Assembly (NCBI GenBank): GCA_037447605.1
Contig: CM074814.1
Coordinates: 868,001-932,000, forward strand
Length of the DNA stretch: 64,000 nt
Direction of reading: 5' to 3'
Source: Zygnema circumcarinatum SAG 698-1b
Taxonomy: Eukaryota > Plantae > Zygnematophyceae
Each line of letters starts with the position of its first letter. Position 1 is the stretch's first letter. Below, piece by piece: positions 25,607 through 35,469 of this stretch. The notes under the pieces were generated by a model. The model was not told the origin of the DNA and did not search any database. It saw only the letters and a program-made list of their open reading frames with translations. A program made the position numbers and the translations under genes.

Positions 25607-26476
25607 CTACGTATGTTCTTCCATTCCGACCCTGAAGGAGTTCACAATCTGCCTTCCTGTAACCAGCCCATTGTCGTACCACCACTTCTCTGTGCCTTGC
25701 ATGCGGCACACATAAAGAGCATCTGCATGAATGGAGATCGACAGCAAAATATGGCGAATGTGCGCCTTCTTCAAGCCGAGGTCCTCGGGATGTAACACGA
25801 CCTCATAGTGGTAGTATGTTCGACCAGTATCATCCCCAAAACTCTCAGCCCACATTACAAAGGCGGGTATTTGCAGTCCAGGAAACATTCGACGCGCACT
25901 CTTTGGGAGGCTGTTGGATTTAAGCTGCGAAGGATCTGGCTGATTTGGAGAGTTGTCCAGCTTCTCGAGGGCACTAATGAATGCTGGAGATGGAGTATAG
26001 TTCATGCCTGCAGGATCAATGCTGCCCAACTTCGGCATGCTGTCCATCCGGGGCAAAGATCCCCAGGATTGTTTCTCAATTCTACCTGACTTCACTTGCG
26101 TTACCCTGGACTGCACAACGTGTTCTTGGTCACTGCTGGACTCAGAAGGAAACCTTGGGAATTCTAAACCTCTCACAGTTCTCGTAGTTTTCTGCAGAAT
26201 GGCGTCTTCACCACCCAGATCGTACTCCCTCCACTTGTGGGTAAGAAAGTCCATTGGCTCGCCATACTCTTCCATGCGGCTGTTGTCAGTTTGATGCAGA
26301 ATCACCTCCACCACAGCTGCCGGCTCCCCTTCTCCCTCTGCCTCCTCGGGGCAGACAAGAGTCGTCAAAACTCGATCATCCAAATACATATCGAAACTCT
26401 CTTCCCAATCCGAAGGGGCGTGGAGACTGAAGCGCAAGCCACGATGCTCCACCCATACAGTAACCGCAGCCTGGGC
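25607..26476 (-). CDS. PsbP (OEE2)/Mog1-fold domain, terminal exon of NHX copy 1
   Basis: RFSLHAPSDW, QTDNSRMEEYGEPMDFL and RTYYHYEV...RHILLSISIHADALYVCRMQGTEKWW...IVNSFRV match the recalled PsbP pattern (GF...P..W; TDKKSITDYGSPEEFL; YY....; KHQLI.A.V..GKLYICKAQAGDKRW...SF.V). No transit peptide and no ATG ahead of the domain. Confidence 0.8.
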   Translation of the reverse strand, partial: AQAAVTVWVEHRGLRFSLHAPSDWEESFDMYLDDRVLTTLVCPEEAEGEGEPAAVVEVILHQTDNSRMEEYGEPMDFLTHKWREYDLGGEDAILQKTTRTVRGLEFPRFPSESSSDQEHVVQSRVTQVKSGRIEKQSWGSLPRMDSMPKLGSIDPAGMNYTPSPAFISALEKLDNSPNQPDPSQLKSNSLPKSARRMFPGLQIPAFVMWAESFGDDTGRTYYHYEVVLHPEDLGLKKAHIRHILLSISIHADALYVCRMQGTEKWWYDNGLVTGRQIVNSFRVGMEEHT

Positions 26477-29400
26477 CTAAGAAACAAGAGGAAAAACAGT
26501 CATTTCTTCTGCATTTTCCTAGTTGAGACAGGCAAGTGCGATTGATCTCCAATAATCCTTTCAGAAGTCCGGTATTGCCAGATGCCCAAACAACACATTA
26601 GAAGTGATGTAGTAGATTGCACAAAACTGTTGGCACTCCAAATTCTCAGGCCAATTGCATAATGGCTCACAAACCGGCCTGGTTTGAAGTCAACCAGCAA
26701 ACACTCATGGCTCACACTCAAGAGAAATTAAATTCTAAGCGGAAAAAGGTGATTTGAAAAACATGCAAGGAAGCACCTTCCCCCACTCAAGGAAATGAAA
26801 CCCCATAGAAAAAAATCACTGGGCCTTCCCCACCCTGGCGGGGTCTTAAGAGCTGCCCACCTCCACCTTATCGTCAAAGCTGCCAACCTCCAAAGTCCGA
26901 TCCATCTGCCCCCCAAAAATTGGCTTCATGTATGTCTGATCAAACCACTTGAACCCGCGGTGGACCCCGGATGGAGGGCCCTGTTCCTGGCGATCCACCA
27001 AGTCAGTGAGATTCTGTCCGGCGATGAGAGGCATGTCGAGGGCCGAATCATTTCGTGCCGAGTGAAGGTCGATCGGAGTGAGACCAAGGAGTTGGAGAGC
27101 AGGAGCAGTGCCTCCTCCAAAGATTACAGTGGTAAAGACCACGACAAACAGTGTTGTGGTTTCCATGGCGCGGTTATTAGTGGGCATGTTTACAGCCAAA
27201 GCATACGCAATGGCACCCCTCAAGCCACTCAGCCACATCATAATCTTCATATTTGTTGTGATTGGCTTACTCCTGTAACACCAACCACCCGTTCCTACGT
27301 TATCAGTTTTAAGTGAATGTATTGAAGGAGCCTCCATCCTCTGCACTGACTAAGATGCATTGAGCCATCAACAGTGCAGTGCAGTATAAAGCTGATTCGA
27401 AAGCTGCAGTGTCGAAACAGTTGCTGTATGCCCGAGCTACCAGTAAAGGATTTGTGGAACAGTGTTAAAGCGTTGATGAGACTGAATCGGCACTTTCGAC
27501 AAAAATACCACAATTGATAATGTAGAAAGCCACGGGCAACGTCTGCAACATTCTGACGTTACATGTTACCACCCATCCCAGCTCCTAGCTCAGTTATACT
27601 CTCCTGAAGCCTTAAGACAATGGATTCAAAATAGAAGCCGTACCTTCCCATATTTGCCAACCATGATAAAGGAAATATGTTCACTGCACGTGAAAGAAGA
27701 CAGAAGGGAATCGCGCTTAATATCAGGCCATAGTCCACAAGGTGGTGAAGAATGACCACTTGCATTCCCAAATACGCGAAGACAAATAGTTCCGAAAGAA
27801 AGGATAGAGCCTCGAATGCGTATTTAGAACCAATTTTTGACGCATGAGAAGTATTGTAGTATCCATAGTGCGCATTGCAGATGCCGCAAAAGAAAAGCGA
27901 CATGATTCCCGAGAGTCCCATGATTTCAGCGACTGAATAAGAGATGTATGCAGAGAGGAGAATGAATGCGAGCTCAAACTTCGCGAATTCGCTTCGAATG
28001 TCAATGTACTTGAGTATAAGGGCACAGCCGAGTGAAACGGCGATGCCGAGAACAATAGAGCCCACGCTGATGGCACAAAACCATACTGCGCAGGAAAAAA
28101 CAGTGAAAGGTTTTGAGAAATAGAGGAAGTAGCAAACTGTAATTCAGACAAAAGGTCTCATGCACATAAAGCCAGAACTGGACAGTTTAAACAAATGCTT
28201 TGTCTTCCACTGCCATAGAAAATCAATTGCAGAGTTCAACCTAAACAAAAGCACAACCTGAGCTGCCATCAGTCTCCAAATTACTCAAGCCCGACATGCT
28301 CAGGCTGTGAAGATATCCCCTCACTCGTTCTTCAGCCTTCCACTCCAAAAACATTATTCAAGTGGATATTCTGACGTAGGTTTTGCTGACCCACATATGG
28401 CAACACCAATTGTTGACAGCGAGAACTCTGCATCAAGGAATGATGCCTGCCAACCAACAGAAATTTAGTCAGCGGCTACGGTTAAGCATCTTGTCAGAAT
28501 CAAATTCAGGCAGGCTCCAAACCTGCCACAGCCATAGCAGTACGCGTAACTGACTAAAGGATGGAGATGACTGACACTAACCAAGCAATCTGGATCATAT
28601 GCAATCTTCAGTAACCATAGTTTAGTAGCTCTGTGAGAGAAAACAAAGGATTCAGAGAAACAAGCTTCCCGATTTTAGAGGACAGATGATGCAAAAACTT
28701 ACAAAGGTGCGAAAGAGGACAATGGAACTAGCATCATTGACGAGGCTCTCTCCGAACACAAGATTGTAGAGCATGCTCGGTGCATGTACATCTGAAGTGC
28801 CATGGATAGAAAGCACATCAGGAAAACAGAGTAATACACATACATCTGATACCCAATTCTTAAATCACCAACAAGCCCTTTAAGATGTCCATGCCTTTCA
28901 TGCAGCACCATTGCGTCAGCAGCAATTCCATCTCATCTCATGTGTAAGGAATGCCCAACGAAATGCTGCGTGGTGTTTTTTTTTCTTTTTGGACCAAAAT
29001 AATACTAAATGGACCACCCCAGTTGCGAAATGGAAAGACCTGGAATCAGCGACGCAGGAATGGCAGGTTCGCAAAGGTATCGTGTCTATGTGTAGCAAAG
29101 AACTGAATCATGAGAACCCTGAAAAAATGAAATACAATTGTTCGAGAATAGTAGGCCGGCGGCATACCTTGAAAGATGGAGAGCGTTGCGACGGGGTCGA
29201 TGGCGGAGATGAGAGAGCCGAACATGAGGCACTCGAGCAGGGGCGAGGTACTGCTGACGTGGGTGATGACGCCCACCAGGTACAGTCCGTACGTGGCGAG
29301 GCCGTACACCAGAGCTGAGATTATGGTTCCAACCACCGCAAAAAGGATAATCGTGCTGAAATTGCGAAAAAAGTCCTGCAAAATTACAAGAGGCAGCACT

Positions 29401-29786
29401 GACCGAATGGTGAGAGAAATTTTGAACCACGTTCTATGAAGAAATATGGTGCATATCCTCGTAAATAGTGCAAGCCACAACCGAAGTGAATGGTCTTGTT
29501 CACTTCTGATGATCGTCTCACATACAGTTTTGAGTGTGAATACTTATTATGCTGCAGTGCCGGAGAAGATGAATAGAAAGTACCTGCCTGCACAAATGAG
29601 GCAGCTATAAATTACAAACCACAAGTATCATCTTCCTCACCTTCTTTCGAAGAGCGTAACCTGCGTTGAAAATGATAATCGGGAGTAAGCCGTAGAAGAA
29701 AATCTCTGGGCTGAAAGTGAGGTCGAGGTCCAGCTTCAGAGCTCGAGTAAGTCCGCCAAATAACATTCCCAAAATCGTCGCTGAAG
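25607..29786 (-). CDS. NHX: Na+/H+ antiporter (CPA1, NHX5/6-NHE8-like) fused to a PsbP-like domain, copy 1; exon 1 not seen, probably in the N gap
   Basis: Exons 29786-29641, 29375-29168, 28791-28703, 28446-28395, 28085-27644, 27272-26867, 26476-25607, all phase-compatible GT-AG. Motifs FFYGLLPIIIFNAGY, ISAIDPVA, VFGESLVNDAS, LSRAVNIFPL, SGLRGA. Confidence 0.85.
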
Positions 29787-30022
29787 CTGTTTTCAAAGAA
29801 GTGATTGACGAATGAAGCAAAGCAAACTCAGCCATTATCTGCCAATTGCTCAGCTCTCTTAATACAAGAGAAGCTCATTCACTAATCAGGAAGTCTTAAT
29901 TCAGGTGCAGGAACAGACATATATTGGAAAATACCAGTTTTTAAAAAGTGAACAGAGTCATATCTCGACTCCCAAAAAACAAGTGAAGACAGTCATGGCA
30001 GGGTATTAACTGACCACTGACA

Positions 30023-30122
30023 NNNNNNNNNNNNNNNNNNNNNNNNNNNNNNNNNNNNNNNNNNNNNNNNNNNNNNNNNNNNNNNNNNNNNNNNNNNNNN
30101 NNNNNNNNNNNNNNNNNNNNNN
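30023..30122. other. Assembly gap (100 N) between the two NHX-PsbP copies
   Basis: Seen directly; it falls inside the intron 1 homolog of copy 1. Confidence 0.99.
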
Positions 30123-30638
30123 GCATACGCCATGAATTAGACACGTTGGCTACAACATATCTCTTCCATCACATTACGTAAAGAAAGTGGCCGAGCCTTT
30201 CAAAACAAATTCCCGGCAGGAACGAGATTGTGGTCAATGCAGAGTACACACTGCACCTGCACACTGCATCTGCACTGTGTCTTGAATTATCGACTTATTT
30301 TAGAAAGCTTTCATCGTCTACAAGCCGGGGGTGGATGCCCCGCCTGCTAAAGGTGATCATGAAAGGCAAGACTAACCCTGCTTCACTAGTGTTGAATCTA
30401 TCTAAGCGCTTACGATTAAAATTGCATTCATCATGCAACCCTGTTTTATTCTTACTAATAAATACCTGCCAATCTAAACTCTGCCTTTGCTAGTCGACCA
30501 TCCAGAACAGAAACAACCCCCCTCCTTCTGGAGATACGAGGTGTCCCAATCTTCTCCTTTCCTGTATTCCCTTCTCCTTTCCCCTAAGCACAAGGGCCGG
30601 AGGTTTGAATGAGCTCAGAACCCCTCTACTCAAATGTT

Positions 30639-31544
30639 CTACTTATGTTCCTCCATTCCGACCCTGAAGGAGTCCACAATCTGCCTGCCTGTAACCAGCC
30701 CATTGTCGTACCACCACTTCTCTGTGCCTTGCATGCGGCACACATAAAGGGCATCTGCATGAATGGAAACCGACAGCAAGATATGACGAATGTGCGCCTT
30801 CTTCAAGCCGAGGTCCTCGGGATGTAACACAACCTCATAGCGGTAGTAGGTCTGAGCCTTTTGATCTTGGTAACTGTCAGCCCACATCACAAAGGCGGGT
30901 ACATGGACTCCAGGAGTACTCAGACGCGCACTCCTTGACACGCTATTGGATGTAAGACGAGAACCTGCAGTGAGCTTTCCTTCCTCAGGGCCCCTTGAAA
31001 GTGTAGAATTTGGCTGATCTGGCGTGTTCTCCTGCTCCTTAATGGTAGCAATTAGGGTTGAAGATGGAGTAAAATTCACGCCTGCAGGATCGACAATGGA
31101 AACATTCGGTAGGCTGTCCAGCCGCTTGAAAGATCCCAAGATTCTCTTCTCAGTTTTCTCCGACTTCATGTCCTCCTTCATTGTTTTGGGCTGCACAAGG
31201 CGCCCCCGGCCCCCGCTGGGCTCCGAAAGTTGGCTTGGGAAGTCTTTCACAGCTTTCTCAATTTTCTCCGCAAGGGCACCTTCACCACCCAAGTCATACT
31301 TCTTCCACTTGTGGCTAAGAAAGTCCATTGGCTCGCCATACTCTTCCATGCGGCTCTTGTCAGTTTGATGCAGAATCACCTCCACTACAGCTGCTGGCTC
31401 TCCTTCTCCCTCTCCCTCCTCCGGGCAGACAAGAGTCGTCAAAACTCGATCATCCAAATACATATCAAAACTCTCTTCCCACTCCGAAGGAGCATGCAGA
31501 CTGAAGCCCGTGCCATAATGCTCCACCCACACAATATCCGGCAC
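30639..31544 (-). CDS. PsbP (OEE2)/Mog1-fold domain, terminal exon of NHX copy 2
   Basis: GTGFSLHAPSEW, QTDKSRMEEYGEPMDFLS, QTYYRYEV...RHILLSVSIHADALYVCRMQGTEKWW...IVDSFRV. An in-frame stop at 31584-31586 and no ATG before the acceptor mean the start of the domain can only be reached by splicing. Confidence 0.82.
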   Translation of the reverse strand: MPDIVWVEHYGTGFSLHAPSEWEESFDMYLDDRVLTTLVCPEEGEGEGEPAAVVEVILHQTDKSRMEEYGEPMDFLSHKWKKYDLGGEGALAEKIEKAVKDFPSQLSEPSGGRGRLVQPKTMKEDMKSEKTEKRILGSFKRLDSLPNVSIVDPAGVNFTPSSTLIATIKEQENTPDQPNSTLSRGPEEGKLTAGSRLTSNSVSRSARLSTPGVHVPAFVMWADSYQDQKAQTYYRYEVVLHPEDLGLKKAHIRHILLSVSIHADALYVCRMQGTEKWWYDNGLVTGRQIVDSFRVGMEEHK

Positions 31545-34500
31545 CTTAGCACAAGAAATAAGAGGGAAAACATCAGTGTCAGTCTAAAAACAATTCTCGC
31601 GAGCTCAAGTCTCGGCAAAACACGCATGAGGGCACCTTCCCACACTGAAAGGGAACCTCAGCGGGAGAAAATCAATGAAACCCTCCCAATCCTGTCTGAC
31701 TGAACGGCTGCTCACCTCATTGAATTGCTCTTCCTCATCTCTAAAGCTGCCGATCTCCAAACTCCGATCAATCTGCCCACCAAAAATGGGCTTCATGTAT
31801 GTCTGATCAAACCACTGGAATGATCGCTGAAACCCTGACGGTGCATTCGGATCATGGCGATCCATCAGATCAAAGAGGCTCTGCCCGGCGATCAGAGGCA
31901 TGTCCAACACTGATTCGTTGCCCGGTGCGAAACCATCGACTGGAGTGAGACCAAGGAGTTGGAGTGAGGGAGCAGTGCCTCCTCCAAAGATCACAGTCGT
32001 AAAGACCACTATGAACAGCGTTGTAGTTTCAATGGCACGGTTGTTGGTGGGCATGTTTGCGGCCAACGCGAAGGCAATGGCACCTCTCAAGCCACTCAGC
32101 CACATCATAATCATCATGTTCTTTGTGATCGGCTTACTCCTGTGAAACACCGGCACCCATCCTACATGATCAGTTCCAACGATTCTACAAGAAAGCCAAC
32201 ACTATCAGCACTGTGCAATTTCCTCTTTGAAGACTGGCATTCAATTGAATTTCTTCACACTGCAAGCGCAAAATCTTTGACAGTGAAATGAGTACCACTC
32301 TCACTAATGACCAAATCATCTGTAAGCCTAAGCCTAAGCCTTGTAGATATTTCTTCGAGCAAAGACATGCAAGTTTGTGGAAATTGACAATGGCCCAAAG
32401 AGTTCGAAGTTATCACAGATCTGAATTACTGGTAATGCGAATGCAGCCTGATGGAAACCAGAAGTTACACTCTCATTAGTCGTTCCAAATAACGGGTTCA
32501 GACCAGGAATCGTACCTTCCCAAATTCGCCAGCCACGCTAGAGGAAACACATTTACTGCTCGTGATAGGAGACAGAGTGGTATAGCAGTTAGTATCAGGC
32601 CGTAGTCCACAACGTGATCAAGTACTACTACTTGCATTCCGAGATATGCGAAGACAAACAGCTCCGAAAGGAAGGCTAGGGCCTCGAATGCATATTTGGA
32701 ACCAATTTTTGTCGCGTGAGAAGTACTGTAGTATCCATAGTGCGCATTGAAGATACCGCAGAAGAAGAGCGACATGATTCCCGAGAGTCCCATCATTTCA
32801 GCAACAGCGTAAGAGAGGTATGCAGAAAGAAGAATGAACGATAACTCAAATTTCGCAAATTCACTGTTGATGTCAATGTACTTAAGAACTAGGGCACAGC
32901 CAAGTGAAAAAGCGACGCCAAGGACGATCGACCCCACGCTGATGACGCAAAACCATGCTGCACAGAACAGCGAGAACGTTTGTTAGTAGTAGAGAAAAAG
33001 TTGCAAACTGCAATTCAAACATGCAGACACACGCTAAAAGTGACCAGGATTGGCCCCTTGCCGCACATGCTTTACCAACCCCTGCCCTGGAAACCAGCAC
33101 GAGCTGACATGTCCTGAAGAATCTCCAAAATTTATTCCAAATGCCTGACATGCTCAGAATGCGAAAATATAGACCAATTTATCCCCTAAACTTGCATTTC
33201 TCAAAACAATCGACTACATGGAATAGTCTGATATAGGTATTGCTGACCCACATATCGCAACGCCGATTGTTGGCAGCGAGAACTCTGTATCAAGGAATGA
33301 TTCCTGCCACTCAATTCAAGTTTAAGTTAGCGGTTGCACTTGAATCATGTTGACGGAATTGCACGAGTCGGGCCGGAATCAGAAAAACCAGTCACGGACC
33401 TAGCAGTGCGGCTATTGACGAAAGCAAAAGAAAGCGGATGGAAAACAAGAAGGTATAAAAGAAAGTGGACCTGACAGGGCAATCAGGATCACAAACAGTG
33501 TACCGTAAAACATCCCGTAGCTCTGGCGAGGAAACAATGAAAAGAACACATTTCGACGGCAGTTGGATGCAACAACTTACAAATGTACGAAAGAGGACAA
33601 TAGAACTCGCATCGTTAACAAGGCTCTCTCCGAACACAAGATTGTAGAGCATGCTTGGTGCGTGTACATCTGAAATTCCATGAGGAGAGAGCTCTATCAG
33701 GCAAACAGAGAAATGCACATACATGAAACATGCCTGAGATACAAGTCAAAAACTCTTCTGCCGCCATGCTCGGTAAGTTGCACTTCTCGTTTGGAAAGTC
33801 AGTAAGGAAACAAGTCCAATGGAAAGCTGCTTTTAGAATTCAAGTCCTGCATTATTTGCATGTGAGCTTTTATGAACACACATACTAAATCAGCTTCACC
33901 AAGTACAAAACTAGATGACTTGAAATCATGTGACACAGGGAAGGCAGGTTCGCAAAGTTTTGAAATGTCCTGTTTGAGTGCACAAAGAACCGTAATCATG
34001 AGAACCCTGAAGGATTGAAATGCAATTCTTCGAGAATAGAAGGCCGGCGGCATACCTTGAAAGATGGAGAGCGTTGCGACGGGGTCGATGGCGGAGATGA
34101 GAGACCCGAACATGAGGCACTCGAGCAGGGGCGAGGTGCTGCTGACGTGGGTGATGACGCCCACCAGGTACAGTCCGTACGTGGCAAGGCCGTACACCAG
34201 AGCTGAGATTATGGTTCCAACCACCGCAAAAAGGATAATCGTGTTGAAATTGCGAAAAAAGTCCTGCAAAATTACAAGAGGCGGCACTGGCCGAATGGTG
34301 AGAGAAATTTTGAATGGATTTTATACCTTTACTCTCCTTCTTCACCAGATAATGCAATAATTGTAGGGATCACTTGAAACCGATAAGCCAAACTGGCTGA
34401 TTTTCAGTACAGACCGAGAAAATAATTTTAAGTCTCAGTTTAAAGTTGGATGAATAGAAGTTATATGTCTGTCACAATGGACGAGCCAGGCAGCCATACC

Positions 34501-35211
34501 TAAGGTTACAAGAACTTGAACCTCACCTTCTTTCGAAGAGCGTAACCTGCATTGAAAATGATGATTGGGAGTAAACCGTAGAAGAAAATCTCTGGGCTGA
34601 AAGTGAGGTCGAGGTCCAGCTTCAGAGCTAGAGTAATTCCGCCAAATAACATTCCCAAAAACATCGCCGAAGCTGTTCCCAAATACAAAGCCAAAGCAAA
34701 ATCAGCCATTATTGGCCAATGCTGCTCAGCTTTCTTAATACAAGAGAAGCGCTTTCACTAATAATAAAAGCCTTAATTCAGAGGGACAGGAACAGAGACA
34801 TCCTAAAAATGGCCAACCTGATCAGCGTCATATCTCGACTTTACAAATAAAAATTGAAGCACGATGCGACCAGATAATGTGATCATTCGTGCAGTTCAAC
34901 GGAGCTATGGAAGGTCAAAAGGCAAAAGAAGCGTCTGACGTTTTCTGAATCAAAATACTTACAATGGAATGTCAAGTAGCATTTAAGTCTCTTAGAGTCA
35001 AAATAAGAACAGTACATCACCACGTGCAGAACGGCCTTCTACTTGCATTAAAAATCAAGCAAACCAAGCAGCCATCAACCGACCCTTCGTCCTTACCTGA
35101 CTCGGGAAAATAGTTGAACTTGAGTTGCTTCGTTATATACGCGGCCATCAAAGCTATGACCATCAAAAACGAGCAGACGATCACACTTGTTGAAACAGTC
35201 TTAATAGCCAT
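30639..35211 (-). CDS. NHX: Na+/H+ antiporter (CPA1, NHX5/6-NHE8-like) fused to a PsbP-like domain, copy 2 (complete)
   Basis: Exons 35211-35097, 34672-34527, 34263-34056, 33669-33581, 33303-33252, 32957-32516, 32139-31716, 31544-30639. Internal exon sizes 146/208/89/52/442 are identical to copy 1, and all phases join. Confidence 0.88.
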
Positions 35212-35247
35212 TGCTGCTGTCGCTCTTCCGACACCTCAAAAACTCGC

Positions 35248-35292
35248 CCTCTCCCTCTCCCTCTCCCTCTCCCTCTCCCTCTCCCTCTCCGT
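35248..35292. repeat. (CTCTCC)n hexanucleotide repeat just upstream of the NHX copy 2 start codon
   Basis: Seen directly. Confidence 0.85.
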
Positions 35293-35469
35293 CTCCCCTT
35301 CCCTGGCCAGCCCTCCCTCTCTTCCTCCCTCACTCCCTTCCGTACAGGCAGCCCGCCGTACTGCCATGGCCGCAAGGCATCAATCACCTTCTTTTGGCGC
35401 CGCAGAGATGCCTTCCCCCCGCCGGCCTCGGCGCCCTTCTACAAGTGGCTGACCAACCACTCACATTCT

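What the first reader, a model, noticed from the sequence alone, without database searches (positions are those of the whole stretch)
25607..35211. Tandem pair of Na+/H+ antiporters spliced in frame to a C-terminal PsbP-like domain (NHX-PsbP fusion)
Seen: in both paralogs the last NHX exon has a phase-0 donor followed by a phase-0 acceptor that opens a long PsbP-like exon. Copy 2 uses AAT GAG|GTGAGC at 31716 and CTAAG|GTG at 31544 (171-bp intron). Copy 1 uses GAT AAG|GTGGAG at 26867 and CTTAG|GCC at 26476 (390-bp intron). The PsbP exon has no start codon or transit peptide ahead of the fold, and copy 2 leaves no room for a promoter. Both halves are intact in both copies. Known: PsbP (OEE2) is a thylakoid-lumen extrinsic subunit of photosystem II involved in Ca2+/Cl- retention, while NHX5/6/NHE8-type exchangers are endomembrane proteins with a regulatory soluble C-tail. 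Inference: a photosynthesis-derived domain was recruited as a regulatory, ion-sensing or interaction module on an endomembrane antiporter. I know of no described protein with this architecture.
Basis: partly seen in the sequence, partly recalled or inferred. Interest (0 to 1): 0.88.

Follow-up and report, generated by a model that had tools for sequence, protein, structure and literature searches.

The report
Antiporter gene fused to PsbP-like domain
Two neighbouring genes in this alga (a close relative of land plants) each join a sodium/proton exchanger of internal membranes to a domain related to a photosystem II subunit; related algae share the fusion, I found no paper on it, and its function is untested.

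Summary
On the minus strand lie two tandem NHE8-type (CPA1) Na+/H+ exchanger genes. Each is followed, across a short phase-0/phase-0 GT..AG intron, by a roughly 300-codon exon. That exon passes Pfam's PsbP threshold and folds as PsbP, split by a disordered insert of about 115-130 residues.

I found no RNA from this genome, so the fusion rests on comparative evidence:
- In four Closterium assemblies, the last exchanger helices, the tail and the PsbP-like domain lie in one stop-free stretch of 662-665 codons.
- Four related loci keep an in-frame intron at the same place.
- No locus offers a start codon for the PsbP exon.
- The two fold halves are under purifying selection.

Exchanger sequences with the fusion group with Closterium and Spirogloea (conjugating green algae), sister to land-plant NHE8-like genes. 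The Chara, liverwort and Selaginella genes show no such exon.

One transcript-like contig from a relative keeps the intron. Its read-through encodes the ancestral acidic tail seen in those three plants, which points to alternative splicing there. Both window copies have lost that tail.

The assembly gap lies outside the junctions but probably hides exon 1 of copy 1.

GenBank holds the architecture only as unnamed or hypothetical Closterium proteins. A cytosolic regulatory role for the domain is inference.

The parts
30639..35211 (-). Copy 2: complete NHE8-like / PsbP-like fusion gene model of 8 exons and 793 aa
   Evidence: The spliced model reads open from the ATG at 35211 to the stop at 30641-30639, with GT..AG at every intron. 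PF00999 matches exons 3, 6 and 7.
31716..32139 (-). Copy 2 exon 7: the last transmembrane helices plus the cytosolic tail, ending in phase 0 at the donor GAG|GTGAGC
   Evidence: The tail motif F(K/Q)WFDQTYMKPIFGG aligns to the solved NHE9 tail (via L003).
31545..31715 (-). Copy 2 junction intron, 171 bp, phase 0 on both sides
   Evidence: Read-through gives 36 unconserved codons and then TGA at 31607-31605.
30639..31544 (-). Copy 2 exon 8: PsbP-like domain of 301 aa plus the stop. The N half of the fold is about 31544-31245, the low-confidence insert about 31244-30906, and the C half about 30905-30642.
   Evidence: Pfam PsbP at 34.5 bits. Both halves match PsbP chains in the PDB. AlphaFold2 model. 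The 17 best Foldseek matches are all PsbP-family proteins.
25607..29786 (-). Copy 1: exons 2-8 of the paralogous fusion gene, 736 aa readable; exon 1 not visible
   Evidence: Open spliced model. It is 87% identical to copy 2 in the exchanger part, and 64-65% identical over the whole of exon 8 (84-85% within the two fold halves).
26477..26866 (-).
   Evidence: Read-through gives 6 codons and then TAA at 26848-26846.
25607..26476 (-). Copy 1 exon 8: PsbP-like domain of 289 aa plus the stop
   Evidence: Pfam PsbP at 31.9 bits.
30023..30122 (.). Assembly gap between the 3' flank of copy 2 and intron 1 of copy 1; it probably hides exon 1 of copy 1
   Evidence: Similarity to intron 1 of copy 2 covers 29818-29988, on the copy 1 side of the gap. 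No exon-1-like sequence lies at 30123-30700. An ATG GCG TAT GC abuts the gap at 30133-30123; as a start codon it is only a possibility.

Best explanation
These are two old tandem paralogs of a real fusion gene. An NHE8/SLC9A8-type electroneutral cation/H+ exchanger of the endomembrane system carries a diverged PsbP-family domain at the end of its C-terminal tail, about 20-25 residues after the conserved juxtamembrane helix. In this genome the two parts are joined by splicing a short phase-0 intron.

Shown here:
- Both parts are intact and in frame.
- The domain is a member of the PsbP family by sequence and by predicted fold.
- The same architecture occurs in a group of related algal sequences. 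In Closterium it lies in a single stop-free stretch, so there it needs no splicing assumption.
- The fold halves evolve under constraint, while the insert inside the fold evolves almost neutrally.

Inferred:
- The fusion arose in the lineage of the conjugating green algae (Zygnematophyceae). A donor site inside the tail-coding exon captured a downstream PsbP-like exon, which replaced the ancestral acidic tail (GLSDDEEF..PE..L..L).
- By homology with solved NHE9 and NHE1 structures, the C-terminus is cytosolic. The PsbP-like domain therefore works outside the thylakoid lumen, most likely as a protein-interaction or regulatory module acting on exchanger activity or sorting. Its long, serine-rich, basic, disordered loop is a plausible phosphorylation target.
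For: Gene models:
- Both copies give open spliced models.
- The transmembrane exons match PF00999. The CPA1 motifs AIDPVA, GESLVNDA and GLRGAIA are present and align to NHE9.

PsbP identity of the last exon:
- Both copies exceed the PF01789 gathering score.
- phmmer matches both halves of algal and plant PsbP.
- In the AlphaFold2 model the fold halves have pLDDT of about 85-93. All 17 Foldseek matches with E <= 0.001 are PsbP, CyanoP or PsbP-like proteins, with target TM-scores of 0.64-0.83.

The fusion elsewhere:
- In Closterium NIES-64, NIES-53 and two assemblies that carry the NIES-68 protein CLOM_g1576, one stop-free stretch of 662-665 codons holds WLSGLRGA, KPLFGG and HPEDLG.
- Annotated Closterium proteins show PF00999 plus a sub-threshold PsbP match.
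- L003, L005 and L006 have a phase-0/phase-0 GT..AG intron at the same tail position. L004, which holds only the end of an upstream exon, has an in-frame GT..AG intron just ahead of its PsbP-like exon.
- No locus has an in-frame ATG ahead of the PsbP exon, and the first Met is not conserved.

Selection:
- dN/dS between copy 1 and copy 2 is 0.11 in the transmembrane part, 0.31 and 0.29 in the two PsbP halves, and 0.94 in the insert.
- Exons are 80-98% identical between the copies; introns are about 70%.

Origin:
- The tree puts all exchangers with the fusion, plus a partial Spirogloea sequence, in one clade (support 96/99), sister to the liverwort and Selaginella genes.
- The Chara, Calypogeia and Selaginella loci have no PsbP-like exon within the flanks fetched. 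Their tails end in the LSDDEEF-type motif.
Against: - No transcript or protein of this genome's own gene was found, so splicing in the window is inferred.
- The only transcript-like contig of a relative (L003) has every other intron removed but keeps this one. It encodes an exchanger-only protein with the ancestral tail.
- Exon 1 of copy 1 is not readable.
- The cytosolic location rests on homology alone. No targeting prediction could be run.
- No data bear on a regulatory role.
Confidence: 0.8

Rival explanations
1. The PsbP exon is an alternative 3' exon, not a constitutive one. The gene makes both an exchanger-only isoform (the donor is read through) and an exchanger/PsbP isoform, and the choice switches the C-terminal module.
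For: L003 is a fully spliced exchanger mRNA that keeps the 924-nt junction intron. Its read-through encodes GEGEGGLSDDEEFLRVPEATMFELSEP, which is homologous to the conserved tail end of the Chara, Calypogeia and Selaginella proteins. L003's PsbP exon is nonetheless intact and constrained.
Against: In the window the read-through tails are 6 and 36 unconserved codons without the acidic motif. In L005 and L006 they are 19 and 9 codons. An exchanger-only isoform there would lack the ancestral tail. In Closterium, by the gene models and the stop-free stretch, the junction has no intron at all.
Confidence: 0.3
2. The exchanger and the PsbP-like exon are two separate genes in the window. The in-frame GT..AG pair is coincidental, and the PsbP-like protein is made from its own transcript.
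For: No junction reads are available. L003 shows an unspliced arrangement.
Against: - No in-frame ATG lies before residue 28 or 30, and none is conserved across loci.
- Only 171 bp separate the two parts in copy 2.
- Frame compatibility is kept in every locus examined, although the PsbP domains have diverged to about 27-46% identity.
- Closterium encodes both parts in one stop-free stretch.
- No free-standing homolog was identified: of 8 hits among 1.84 billion representatives, those whose surroundings could be read lie downstream of an exchanger.
Confidence: 0.04
3. The fusion protein sits in a plastid or thylakoid membrane, with the PsbP-like domain in the lumen, so the domain keeps a photosynthesis-related role.
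For: As far as I know, every characterised member of the PsbP family is lumenal or periplasmic. The His/acid pair typical of the family is retained.
Against: - The protein starts directly with a helix homologous to TM1 of NHE9 (residues 9-51), with no presequence.
- Its relatives are NHE8-type endomembrane exchangers.
- The score on the PSII PsbP equivalog model is 15 bits against a cut-off of 60.
- Solved NHE structures place the tail in the cytosol (established knowledge, not tested here).
Confidence: 0.05
4. The PsbP-like exon is a decaying relic that is no longer translated in this lineage.
For: None beyond the lack of RNA data.
Against: Both copies keep open frames of 289-301 codons. Between the copies dN/dS is about 0.3 in the fold halves and 0.94 in the insert. 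Against L003, dN/dS in the fold halves is about 0.13-0.16. Fourteen columns are invariant across 10 sequences.
Confidence: 0.02

Closest known systems
Closterium hypothetical or unnamed proteins: CLOM_g1576 of NIES-68 (978 aa), CAI5972212.1 of NIES-64, CAI7849760.1 of NIES-53
   Same: Same architecture: an NHE8-like PF00999 core, the KP(L/I)FGG tail, and a PsbP-like domain with a long insert. They fall in the same clade in the exchanger tree.
   Different: - In the gene models and the stop-free stretch, the junction has no intron.
- The insert is much longer and alanine/serine-rich.
- The PsbP match is below Pfam's threshold (17.6-20.6 bits), so automatic annotation misses it.
- Identity to the window is about 27-32% in the domain and about 65% in the exchanger.
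PsbP family (PsbP/OEE2, PsbP-like PPL, PsbP-domain PPD, cyanobacterial CyanoP; PF01789)
   Same: The sequence match exceeds the gathering score and the predicted fold is the same. The conserved His and downstream acidic residue align: RH...(D/E)K(R/W)W.
   Different: - The domain is internal to a membrane transporter and has no lumen-targeting presequence.
- It is split by an insert of about 115-130 residues.
- It scores far below the PSII PsbP equivalog cut-off.
- Its predicted compartment is the cytosol.
Animal NHE8 (SLC9A8) and the streptophyte NHE8-like genes of Chara braunii, Calypogeia fissa and Selaginella moellendorffii
   Same: These are the best named relatives of the exchanger part, at 60-64% identity for the streptophyte genes (measured with L003 as the query). 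Motifs and tail helix are shared.
   Different: Their proteins (506-558 aa) end in a short acidic tail (LSDDEEF..PE..) and have no PsbP-like exon in the flanks fetched.
CPA1 exchangers with large C-terminal regulatory modules: plant SOS1/NHX7, sperm SLC9C1, and the NHE1 tail that binds CHP and calmodulin
   Same: This comparison concerns how the protein may work. In each case a cytosolic C-terminal module appended to the same transporter core tunes its activity (established knowledge).
   Different: The appended folds are unrelated (cyclic-nucleotide-binding-like domains, voltage-sensor domains, helical binding sites). None is a PsbP fold.
Mog1p (Ran-binding protein) and other members of the Mog1/PsbP-like fold superfamily
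   Same: They share the fold superfamily, and Mog1p shows that this fold can serve as a cytosolic or nuclear protein-binding platform. Foldseek matches it at E = 4e-3.
   Different: The match is far weaker than to PsbP proper. Sequence similarity points to PsbP, not to Mog1.

Membership tests
PsbP family (Pfam PF01789) | Score at or above Pfam's gathering threshold (23.5 bits) | tested here: met
   34.5 bits for copy 2 and 31.9 bits for copy 1.
PsbP family (Pfam PF01789) | PsbP alpha/beta sandwich fold | tested here: met
   In the AlphaFold2 model the fold halves have pLDDT of about 85-93. The 17 best Foldseek PDB matches are PsbP, CyanoP or PsbP-like proteins, with probability 1.00 and target TM-scores of 0.64-0.83.
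PsbP family (Pfam PF01789) | Conserved His and downstream acidic residue (His144/Asp165 of spinach PsbP; that numbering is from memory) | tested here: met
   RH and (T)EKW of the query align to RH and (G)DKRW of Dunaliella PsbP. H254 and E275 are invariant in all 10 fusion-domain sequences.
PsbP family (Pfam PF01789) | One contiguous domain of about 155-190 residues | tested here: not met
   Query residues 7-78 and 221-294 match PsbP 19-83 and 115-185. About 30 PsbP residues are replaced by some 140, which are mostly low-confidence in the model.
PsbP family (Pfam PF01789) | Thylakoid-lumen targeting (N-terminal bipartite transit peptide) | tested here: not met
   The domain is C-terminal in a polytopic protein whose N-terminus starts with TM1. 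No targeting predictor was available.
Photosystem II PsbP proper (NCBIfam NF040946, equivalog) | Score at or above the cut-off of 60 bits | tested here: not met
   15.4 and 13.1 bits.
CPA1 Na+(K+)/H+ exchanger, NHE8/SLC9A8-like | PF00999 transmembrane domain | tested here: met
   Exons 3, 6 and 7 score 38.5, 66.7 and 23.3 bits as single exons. The Closterium ortholog scores 226.6 bits on PF00999 and 338.8 bits on TIGR00840, whose cut-off is 251.
CPA1 Na+(K+)/H+ exchanger, NHE8/SLC9A8-like | Ion-binding and transport motifs: TM4 DPVA, TM5 ES..NDA, TM11 GLRGA | tested here: met
   SAIDPVA, FGESLVNDA and SGLRGAIA are present in both copies. The identical motifs in L003 align to NHE9.
CPA1 Na+(K+)/H+ exchanger, NHE8/SLC9A8-like | Closest relatives are NHE8-type | tested here: met
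   The named best hits are NHE8 or SLC9A8 proteins and streptophyte NHE8-like proteins. The tree follows the species tree within this clade.
CPA1 Na+(K+)/H+ exchanger, NHE8/SLC9A8-like | Cation/H+ exchange activity and endomembrane location | not testable with these tools
   Needs yeast complementation, transport assays and localisation.
   No NHX5/6 or flowering-plant protein appears among the 120 best of 1500 hits. No explicit tree with NHX5/6 was built.

The most novel reading that the evidence does not exclude
This would be the first PsbP-family domain that works outside the thylakoid lumen. [quoted passage not shown] In at least one species, alternative splicing would swap it against the ancestral acidic tail, whose sequence looks like a sorting signal, so that one gene makes two exchangers with different regulation or destination.
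Probability: 0.45. Interest if true: 0.72.

Novelty: new variant of a known kind. Interest (0 to 1): 0.6.

Why it matters
As far as I know, PsbP and all its characterised relatives are accessory proteins of the thylakoid lumen or the cyanobacterial periplasm. A conserved copy under selection, fixed to the cytosolic tail of an endomembrane Na+/H+ exchanger, would show this fold used in a new compartment for a new purpose. It would also add a new kind of regulatory appendage to the CPA1 exchangers.

The fusion appears confined to the algae closest to land plants. Their land-plant sister genes keep a different, acidic tail. The family therefore offers a dated, testable case of how pH and ion homeostasis of the endomembrane system was rewired near the origin of land plants.

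L003 shows a form in which the ancestral tail and the captured exon coexist in one transcript. That may be an intermediate stage of the exon capture.

Tried and rejected
- **RNA or protein of this genome's own gene.** The word-index searches with the exchanger part (query L003) and with the PsbP exon returned no hit from the window itself. The nearest is L003/P0001, from another species or an old paralog, with saturated dS. The index also failed to return L003's own 550-aa product, so a blank here is weak evidence.
- **A PsbP-like exon downstream of NHE8-like genes in Chara, Calypogeia and Selaginella.** tblastn found nothing in up to 10 kb of flank. In Selaginella a tetraspanin gene starts about 120 bp downstream. 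Chara has very long introns, so absence there is less certain.
- **Exon 1 of copy 1.** It is not found on either side of the gap.
- **Literature.** Six full-text searches and two papers read gave no description of an exchanger/PsbP fusion.
- **Orthology to PSII PsbP.** Rejected, at 15 bits against a cut-off of 60.
- **An independent start for the PsbP exon.** Rejected.
- **My first model of exon 5.** It used the wrong donor and broke the frame. The donor GTGGGT at 33251 restores it.
- The spliced 793-aa protein could not be handed to the structure or family tools as one sequence, because it has no reference. Domains were therefore tested exon by exon, and the full-length dimer was not folded.


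Full report
**What is in the sequence**

Bases 25607-35211 of the minus strand hold two paralogous, intron-rich eukaryotic genes in tandem.

For copy 2 I built an eight-exon model (35211-35097, 34672-34527, 34263-34056, 33669-33581, 33303-33252, 32957-32516, 32139-31716, 31544-30639). Every intron is GT..AG, and the model reads as one 793-aa ORF. My first attempt used a wrong donor for exon 5 and broke the frame.

Copy 1 gives the same structure for exons 2-8 (29786-29641 through 26476-25607) and reads open for 736 aa.

- Copy 2: exon 7 ends in phase 0 at 31716 (AAT GAG|GTGAGC) and exon 8 starts in phase 0 at 31544, so the intron is 171 bp.
- Copy 1: GAT AAG|GTGGAG at 26867 and CTTAG|GCC at 26476, so the intron is 390 bp.
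- Copy 1 also has a second in-frame donor 6 nt further on (GAG|GTGGGC, exon end 26861). It is the positional homolog of the donor in copy 2 and in the relative L003. Either donor keeps the frame.
- Read-through would stop after 36 codons (TGA at 31607-31605) in copy 2 and after 6 codons (TAA at 26848-26846) in copy 1.

**The assembly gap**

The run of N at 30023-30122 lies between the stop codon of copy 2 and exon 2 of copy 1. It interrupts no exon in either model and touches neither exchanger/PsbP junction.

On the copy 1 side of the gap, 29818-29988 is homologous to intron 1 of copy 2. The sequence on the other side of the gap is the 3' flank of copy 2. No sequence like exon 1 is readable on either side. 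Exon 1 of copy 1 is therefore most likely inside the gap. An ATG GCG TAT GC abuts the gap at 30133-30123, but that is too short to judge.

Two things cannot be verified: that copy 1 is complete at its 5' end, and the exact spacing of the tandem pair.

**Identity of the two halves**

The transmembrane exons match PF00999. They carry the CPA1 motifs SAIDPVA, FGESLVNDA and SGLRGAIA.

L003 is a transcript-like contig from a relative, 84-86% identical to the window copies in the transmembrane part. Its exchanger part aligns over nearly its full length with solved NHE9, NHE6, NHE1 and NHE3 structures, including the tail helix FDxxY(L/M)KP(I/L).

The best named relatives are NHE8/SLC9A8-type proteins, followed by the NHE8-like genes of Chara braunii, the liverwort Calypogeia fissa, Closterium and Selaginella at 60-65% identity. 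No NHX5/6 or flowering-plant protein appears among the best 120 hits. The exchanger is NHE8-like, not NHX5/6-like.

The last exon scores 34.5 bits (copy 2) and 31.9 bits (copy 1) on Pfam PsbP, against a gathering score of 23.5. phmmer against the PDB matches green-algal and plant PsbP in two blocks: residues 7-78 to PsbP 19-83, and residues 221-294 to PsbP 115-185. The fold is thus complete but split by a long insert.

An AlphaFold2 model built from ten family members has pLDDT of about 85-93 in the two halves and below 50 over residues 103-128 and 141-213. All 17 Foldseek matches in the PDB with E <= 0.001 are PsbP, CyanoP or PsbP-like subunits, with target TM-scores of 0.64-0.83. Mog1p follows far behind.

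The conserved His and the downstream acidic residue of the PsbP family align. They are invariant in all ten fusion-domain sequences, as H254 and E275.

The domain is not an ortholog of PSII PsbP. It scores 15 bits against a cut-off of 60 on the equivalog model.

**Is the fusion real?**

I found no RNA or protein of this genome's own gene, so the case is comparative. It is nevertheless strong.

1. An exhaustive HMMER search of 1.84 billion representative proteins found only eight relatives of the PsbP-like exon. Two of them are annotated Closterium proteins with PF00999 in front and this domain at the end. A further search added the full-length 978-aa CLOM_g1576 of Closterium NIES-68.
2. In four Closterium assemblies, one stop-free stretch of 662-665 codons contains the TM11 motif WLSGLRGA, the tail motif KPLFGG and the domain motif HPEDLG. 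There the fusion needs no splicing assumption.
3. Three further contigs carry exchanger exons followed on the same strand by the PsbP-like exon, across a phase-0/phase-0 GT..AG intron at the same tail position: L003 (1523-2446), L005 (1133-1223) and L006 (2465-2646). A fourth, L004, holds only the last 38 nt of an upstream exon but has an in-frame GT..AG intron (39-137) just ahead of its PsbP-like exon.
4. No locus has an in-frame ATG ahead of the acceptor. The first Met lies at residue 23-81 and is not conserved.
5. Between the two window copies, dN/dS is 0.11 in the transmembrane part, 0.29 in the tail, 0.31 and 0.29 in the two PsbP halves, and 0.94 in the insert. Exons are 80-98% identical in nucleotides; introns are about 70%. 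The duplication is old, and the fold halves of the PsbP exon are under purifying selection.

**A complication that adds to the story**

L003 (run SRR8128906) looks like mRNA. Its exchanger part is one 536-codon ORF with none of the upstream introns, yet the 924-nt junction intron is still there.

The read-through it encodes is VGSFSMGRREGEGEGGLSDDEEFLRVPEATMFELSEPVQDSRV. It is homologous to the conserved C-terminal end of the Chara, Calypogeia and Selaginella proteins, which is of the form GLSDDEEFxxSPE..L..L. The L003 contig is therefore the ancestral, exchanger-only message, and the splice donor lies inside what used to be tail-coding sequence.

L003's PsbP exon is intact, starts after a good pyrimidine tract and acceptor in phase 0, and is constrained (dN/dS of about 0.13-0.16 against the window). 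Alternative splicing is the most economical reading for that species.

In the window, and in L005 and L006, the read-through tails are short and unconserved. The ancestral tail has been lost there, and the PsbP exon is probably constitutive.

**Where and when**

A maximum-likelihood tree of the exchanger cores follows the species tree. Chlorophyte sequences branch first, then Chara. The liverwort and Selaginella genes form a clade with support 98/98. Its sister clade (support 96/99) contains the window copies, L003, L005, L006, Closterium and a partial Spirogloea sequence.

This agrees with earlier notes of this scan that the genome is probably a conjugating green alga.

No PsbP-like exon was found within the fetched flanks of the Chara, Calypogeia or Selaginella genes. 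In Selaginella another gene starts about 120 bp downstream.

The simplest history is a single capture of a PsbP-like exon in the Zygnematophyceae lineage. Loss in land plants cannot be excluded.

**How it probably works (inference)**

Solved NHE1 and NHE9 structures place the C-terminal tail in the cytosol (established knowledge). Neither the tail nor the insert contains a hydrophobic segment that could flip the topology. The protein starts directly with TM1 and has no presequence.

The PsbP-like domain should therefore sit in the cytosol, about 20-25 residues after the juxtamembrane helix. In other NHEs that helix carries regulatory interactions.

I therefore favour a role as a protein-interaction or regulatory module that replaces the ancestral acidic tail. 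That tail, with its S-D-D-E-E acidic cluster, looks like a sorting signal. This resemblance is from memory and was not tested.

The insert is disordered, fast-evolving and rich in serine and basic residues. It has small conserved patches: DPAG(V/M/I)N(F/Y) in the window copies and L003, and an R-S-x-S-like motif just before the C-terminal half in most members. That makes it a plausible phosphorylation loop. None of this was tested.

**Comparison with what is known, and novelty**

The two parts belong to well-known families. The combination exists in GenBank only as 'hypothetical' or 'unnamed' Closterium proteins. In those proteins the PsbP match falls below Pfam's threshold (17.6-20.6 bits), so domain pipelines would not flag it.

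Six full-text searches and two papers read turned up no description of the architecture.

I class it as a new variant of a known kind: an NHE8-type exchanger with a new C-terminal module, and a PsbP-family domain in a new context.

Its interest is moderate to high for people who work on the PsbP family, on plant ion transport or on streptophyte evolution. It is limited by the lack of any functional data and of direct RNA evidence in this genome.

Noticed in passing
L003:1523-1654: The retained 'intron' of this transcript-like contig encodes the ancestral acidic C-terminal tail (GLSDDEEFLRVPEATMFEL) shared with the NHE8-like proteins of Chara, Calypogeia and Selaginella. The splice donor that leads to the PsbP exon therefore lies inside former coding sequence, and that species may make two isoforms.
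   Followed up: partly
window 26861-26867 (minus strand): Copy 1 has two in-frame GT donors 6 nt apart: AAG|GTGGAG and GAG|GTGGGC. The second is the positional homolog of the donor in copy 2 and in L003. The two choices differ by two residues (Val-Glu).
   Followed up: partly
window 35235-35335 (minus strand): A (GAGAGG)n-type purine microsatellite lies about 25-125 bp upstream of the ATG of copy 2. Nothing similar is readable upstream of copy 1.
   Followed up: no
window 34056-34263 and 29168-29375: Exon 3 is 98% identical in nucleotides between the copies and exon 2 is 94%, against 80-82% for exons 6-8 and about 70% for introns. dS is also lower in the PsbP halves (about 0.26) than in the transmembrane part (0.46). 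This patchiness may reflect local gene conversion between the paralogs.
   Followed up: partly
window 30906-31244 (insert in exon 8 of copy 2) and alignment A1: Inside the otherwise unconserved insert, a short DPAG(V/M/I)N(F/Y) patch is shared by the window copies and L003. A basic, serine-rich R-S-x-S-like patch just before the C-terminal half of the fold recurs in most family members. These may be phosphorylation or docking sites.
   Followed up: no
L001:8001-9900 (Closterium NIES-64): The annotated protein P0003 repeats short exchanger segments (for example ANKIP(A/T)NMILMM four times). The locus holds several near-identical copies of the exons around TM8-TM11, so this is either local exon duplication or a gene model confused by repeats.
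   Followed up: no
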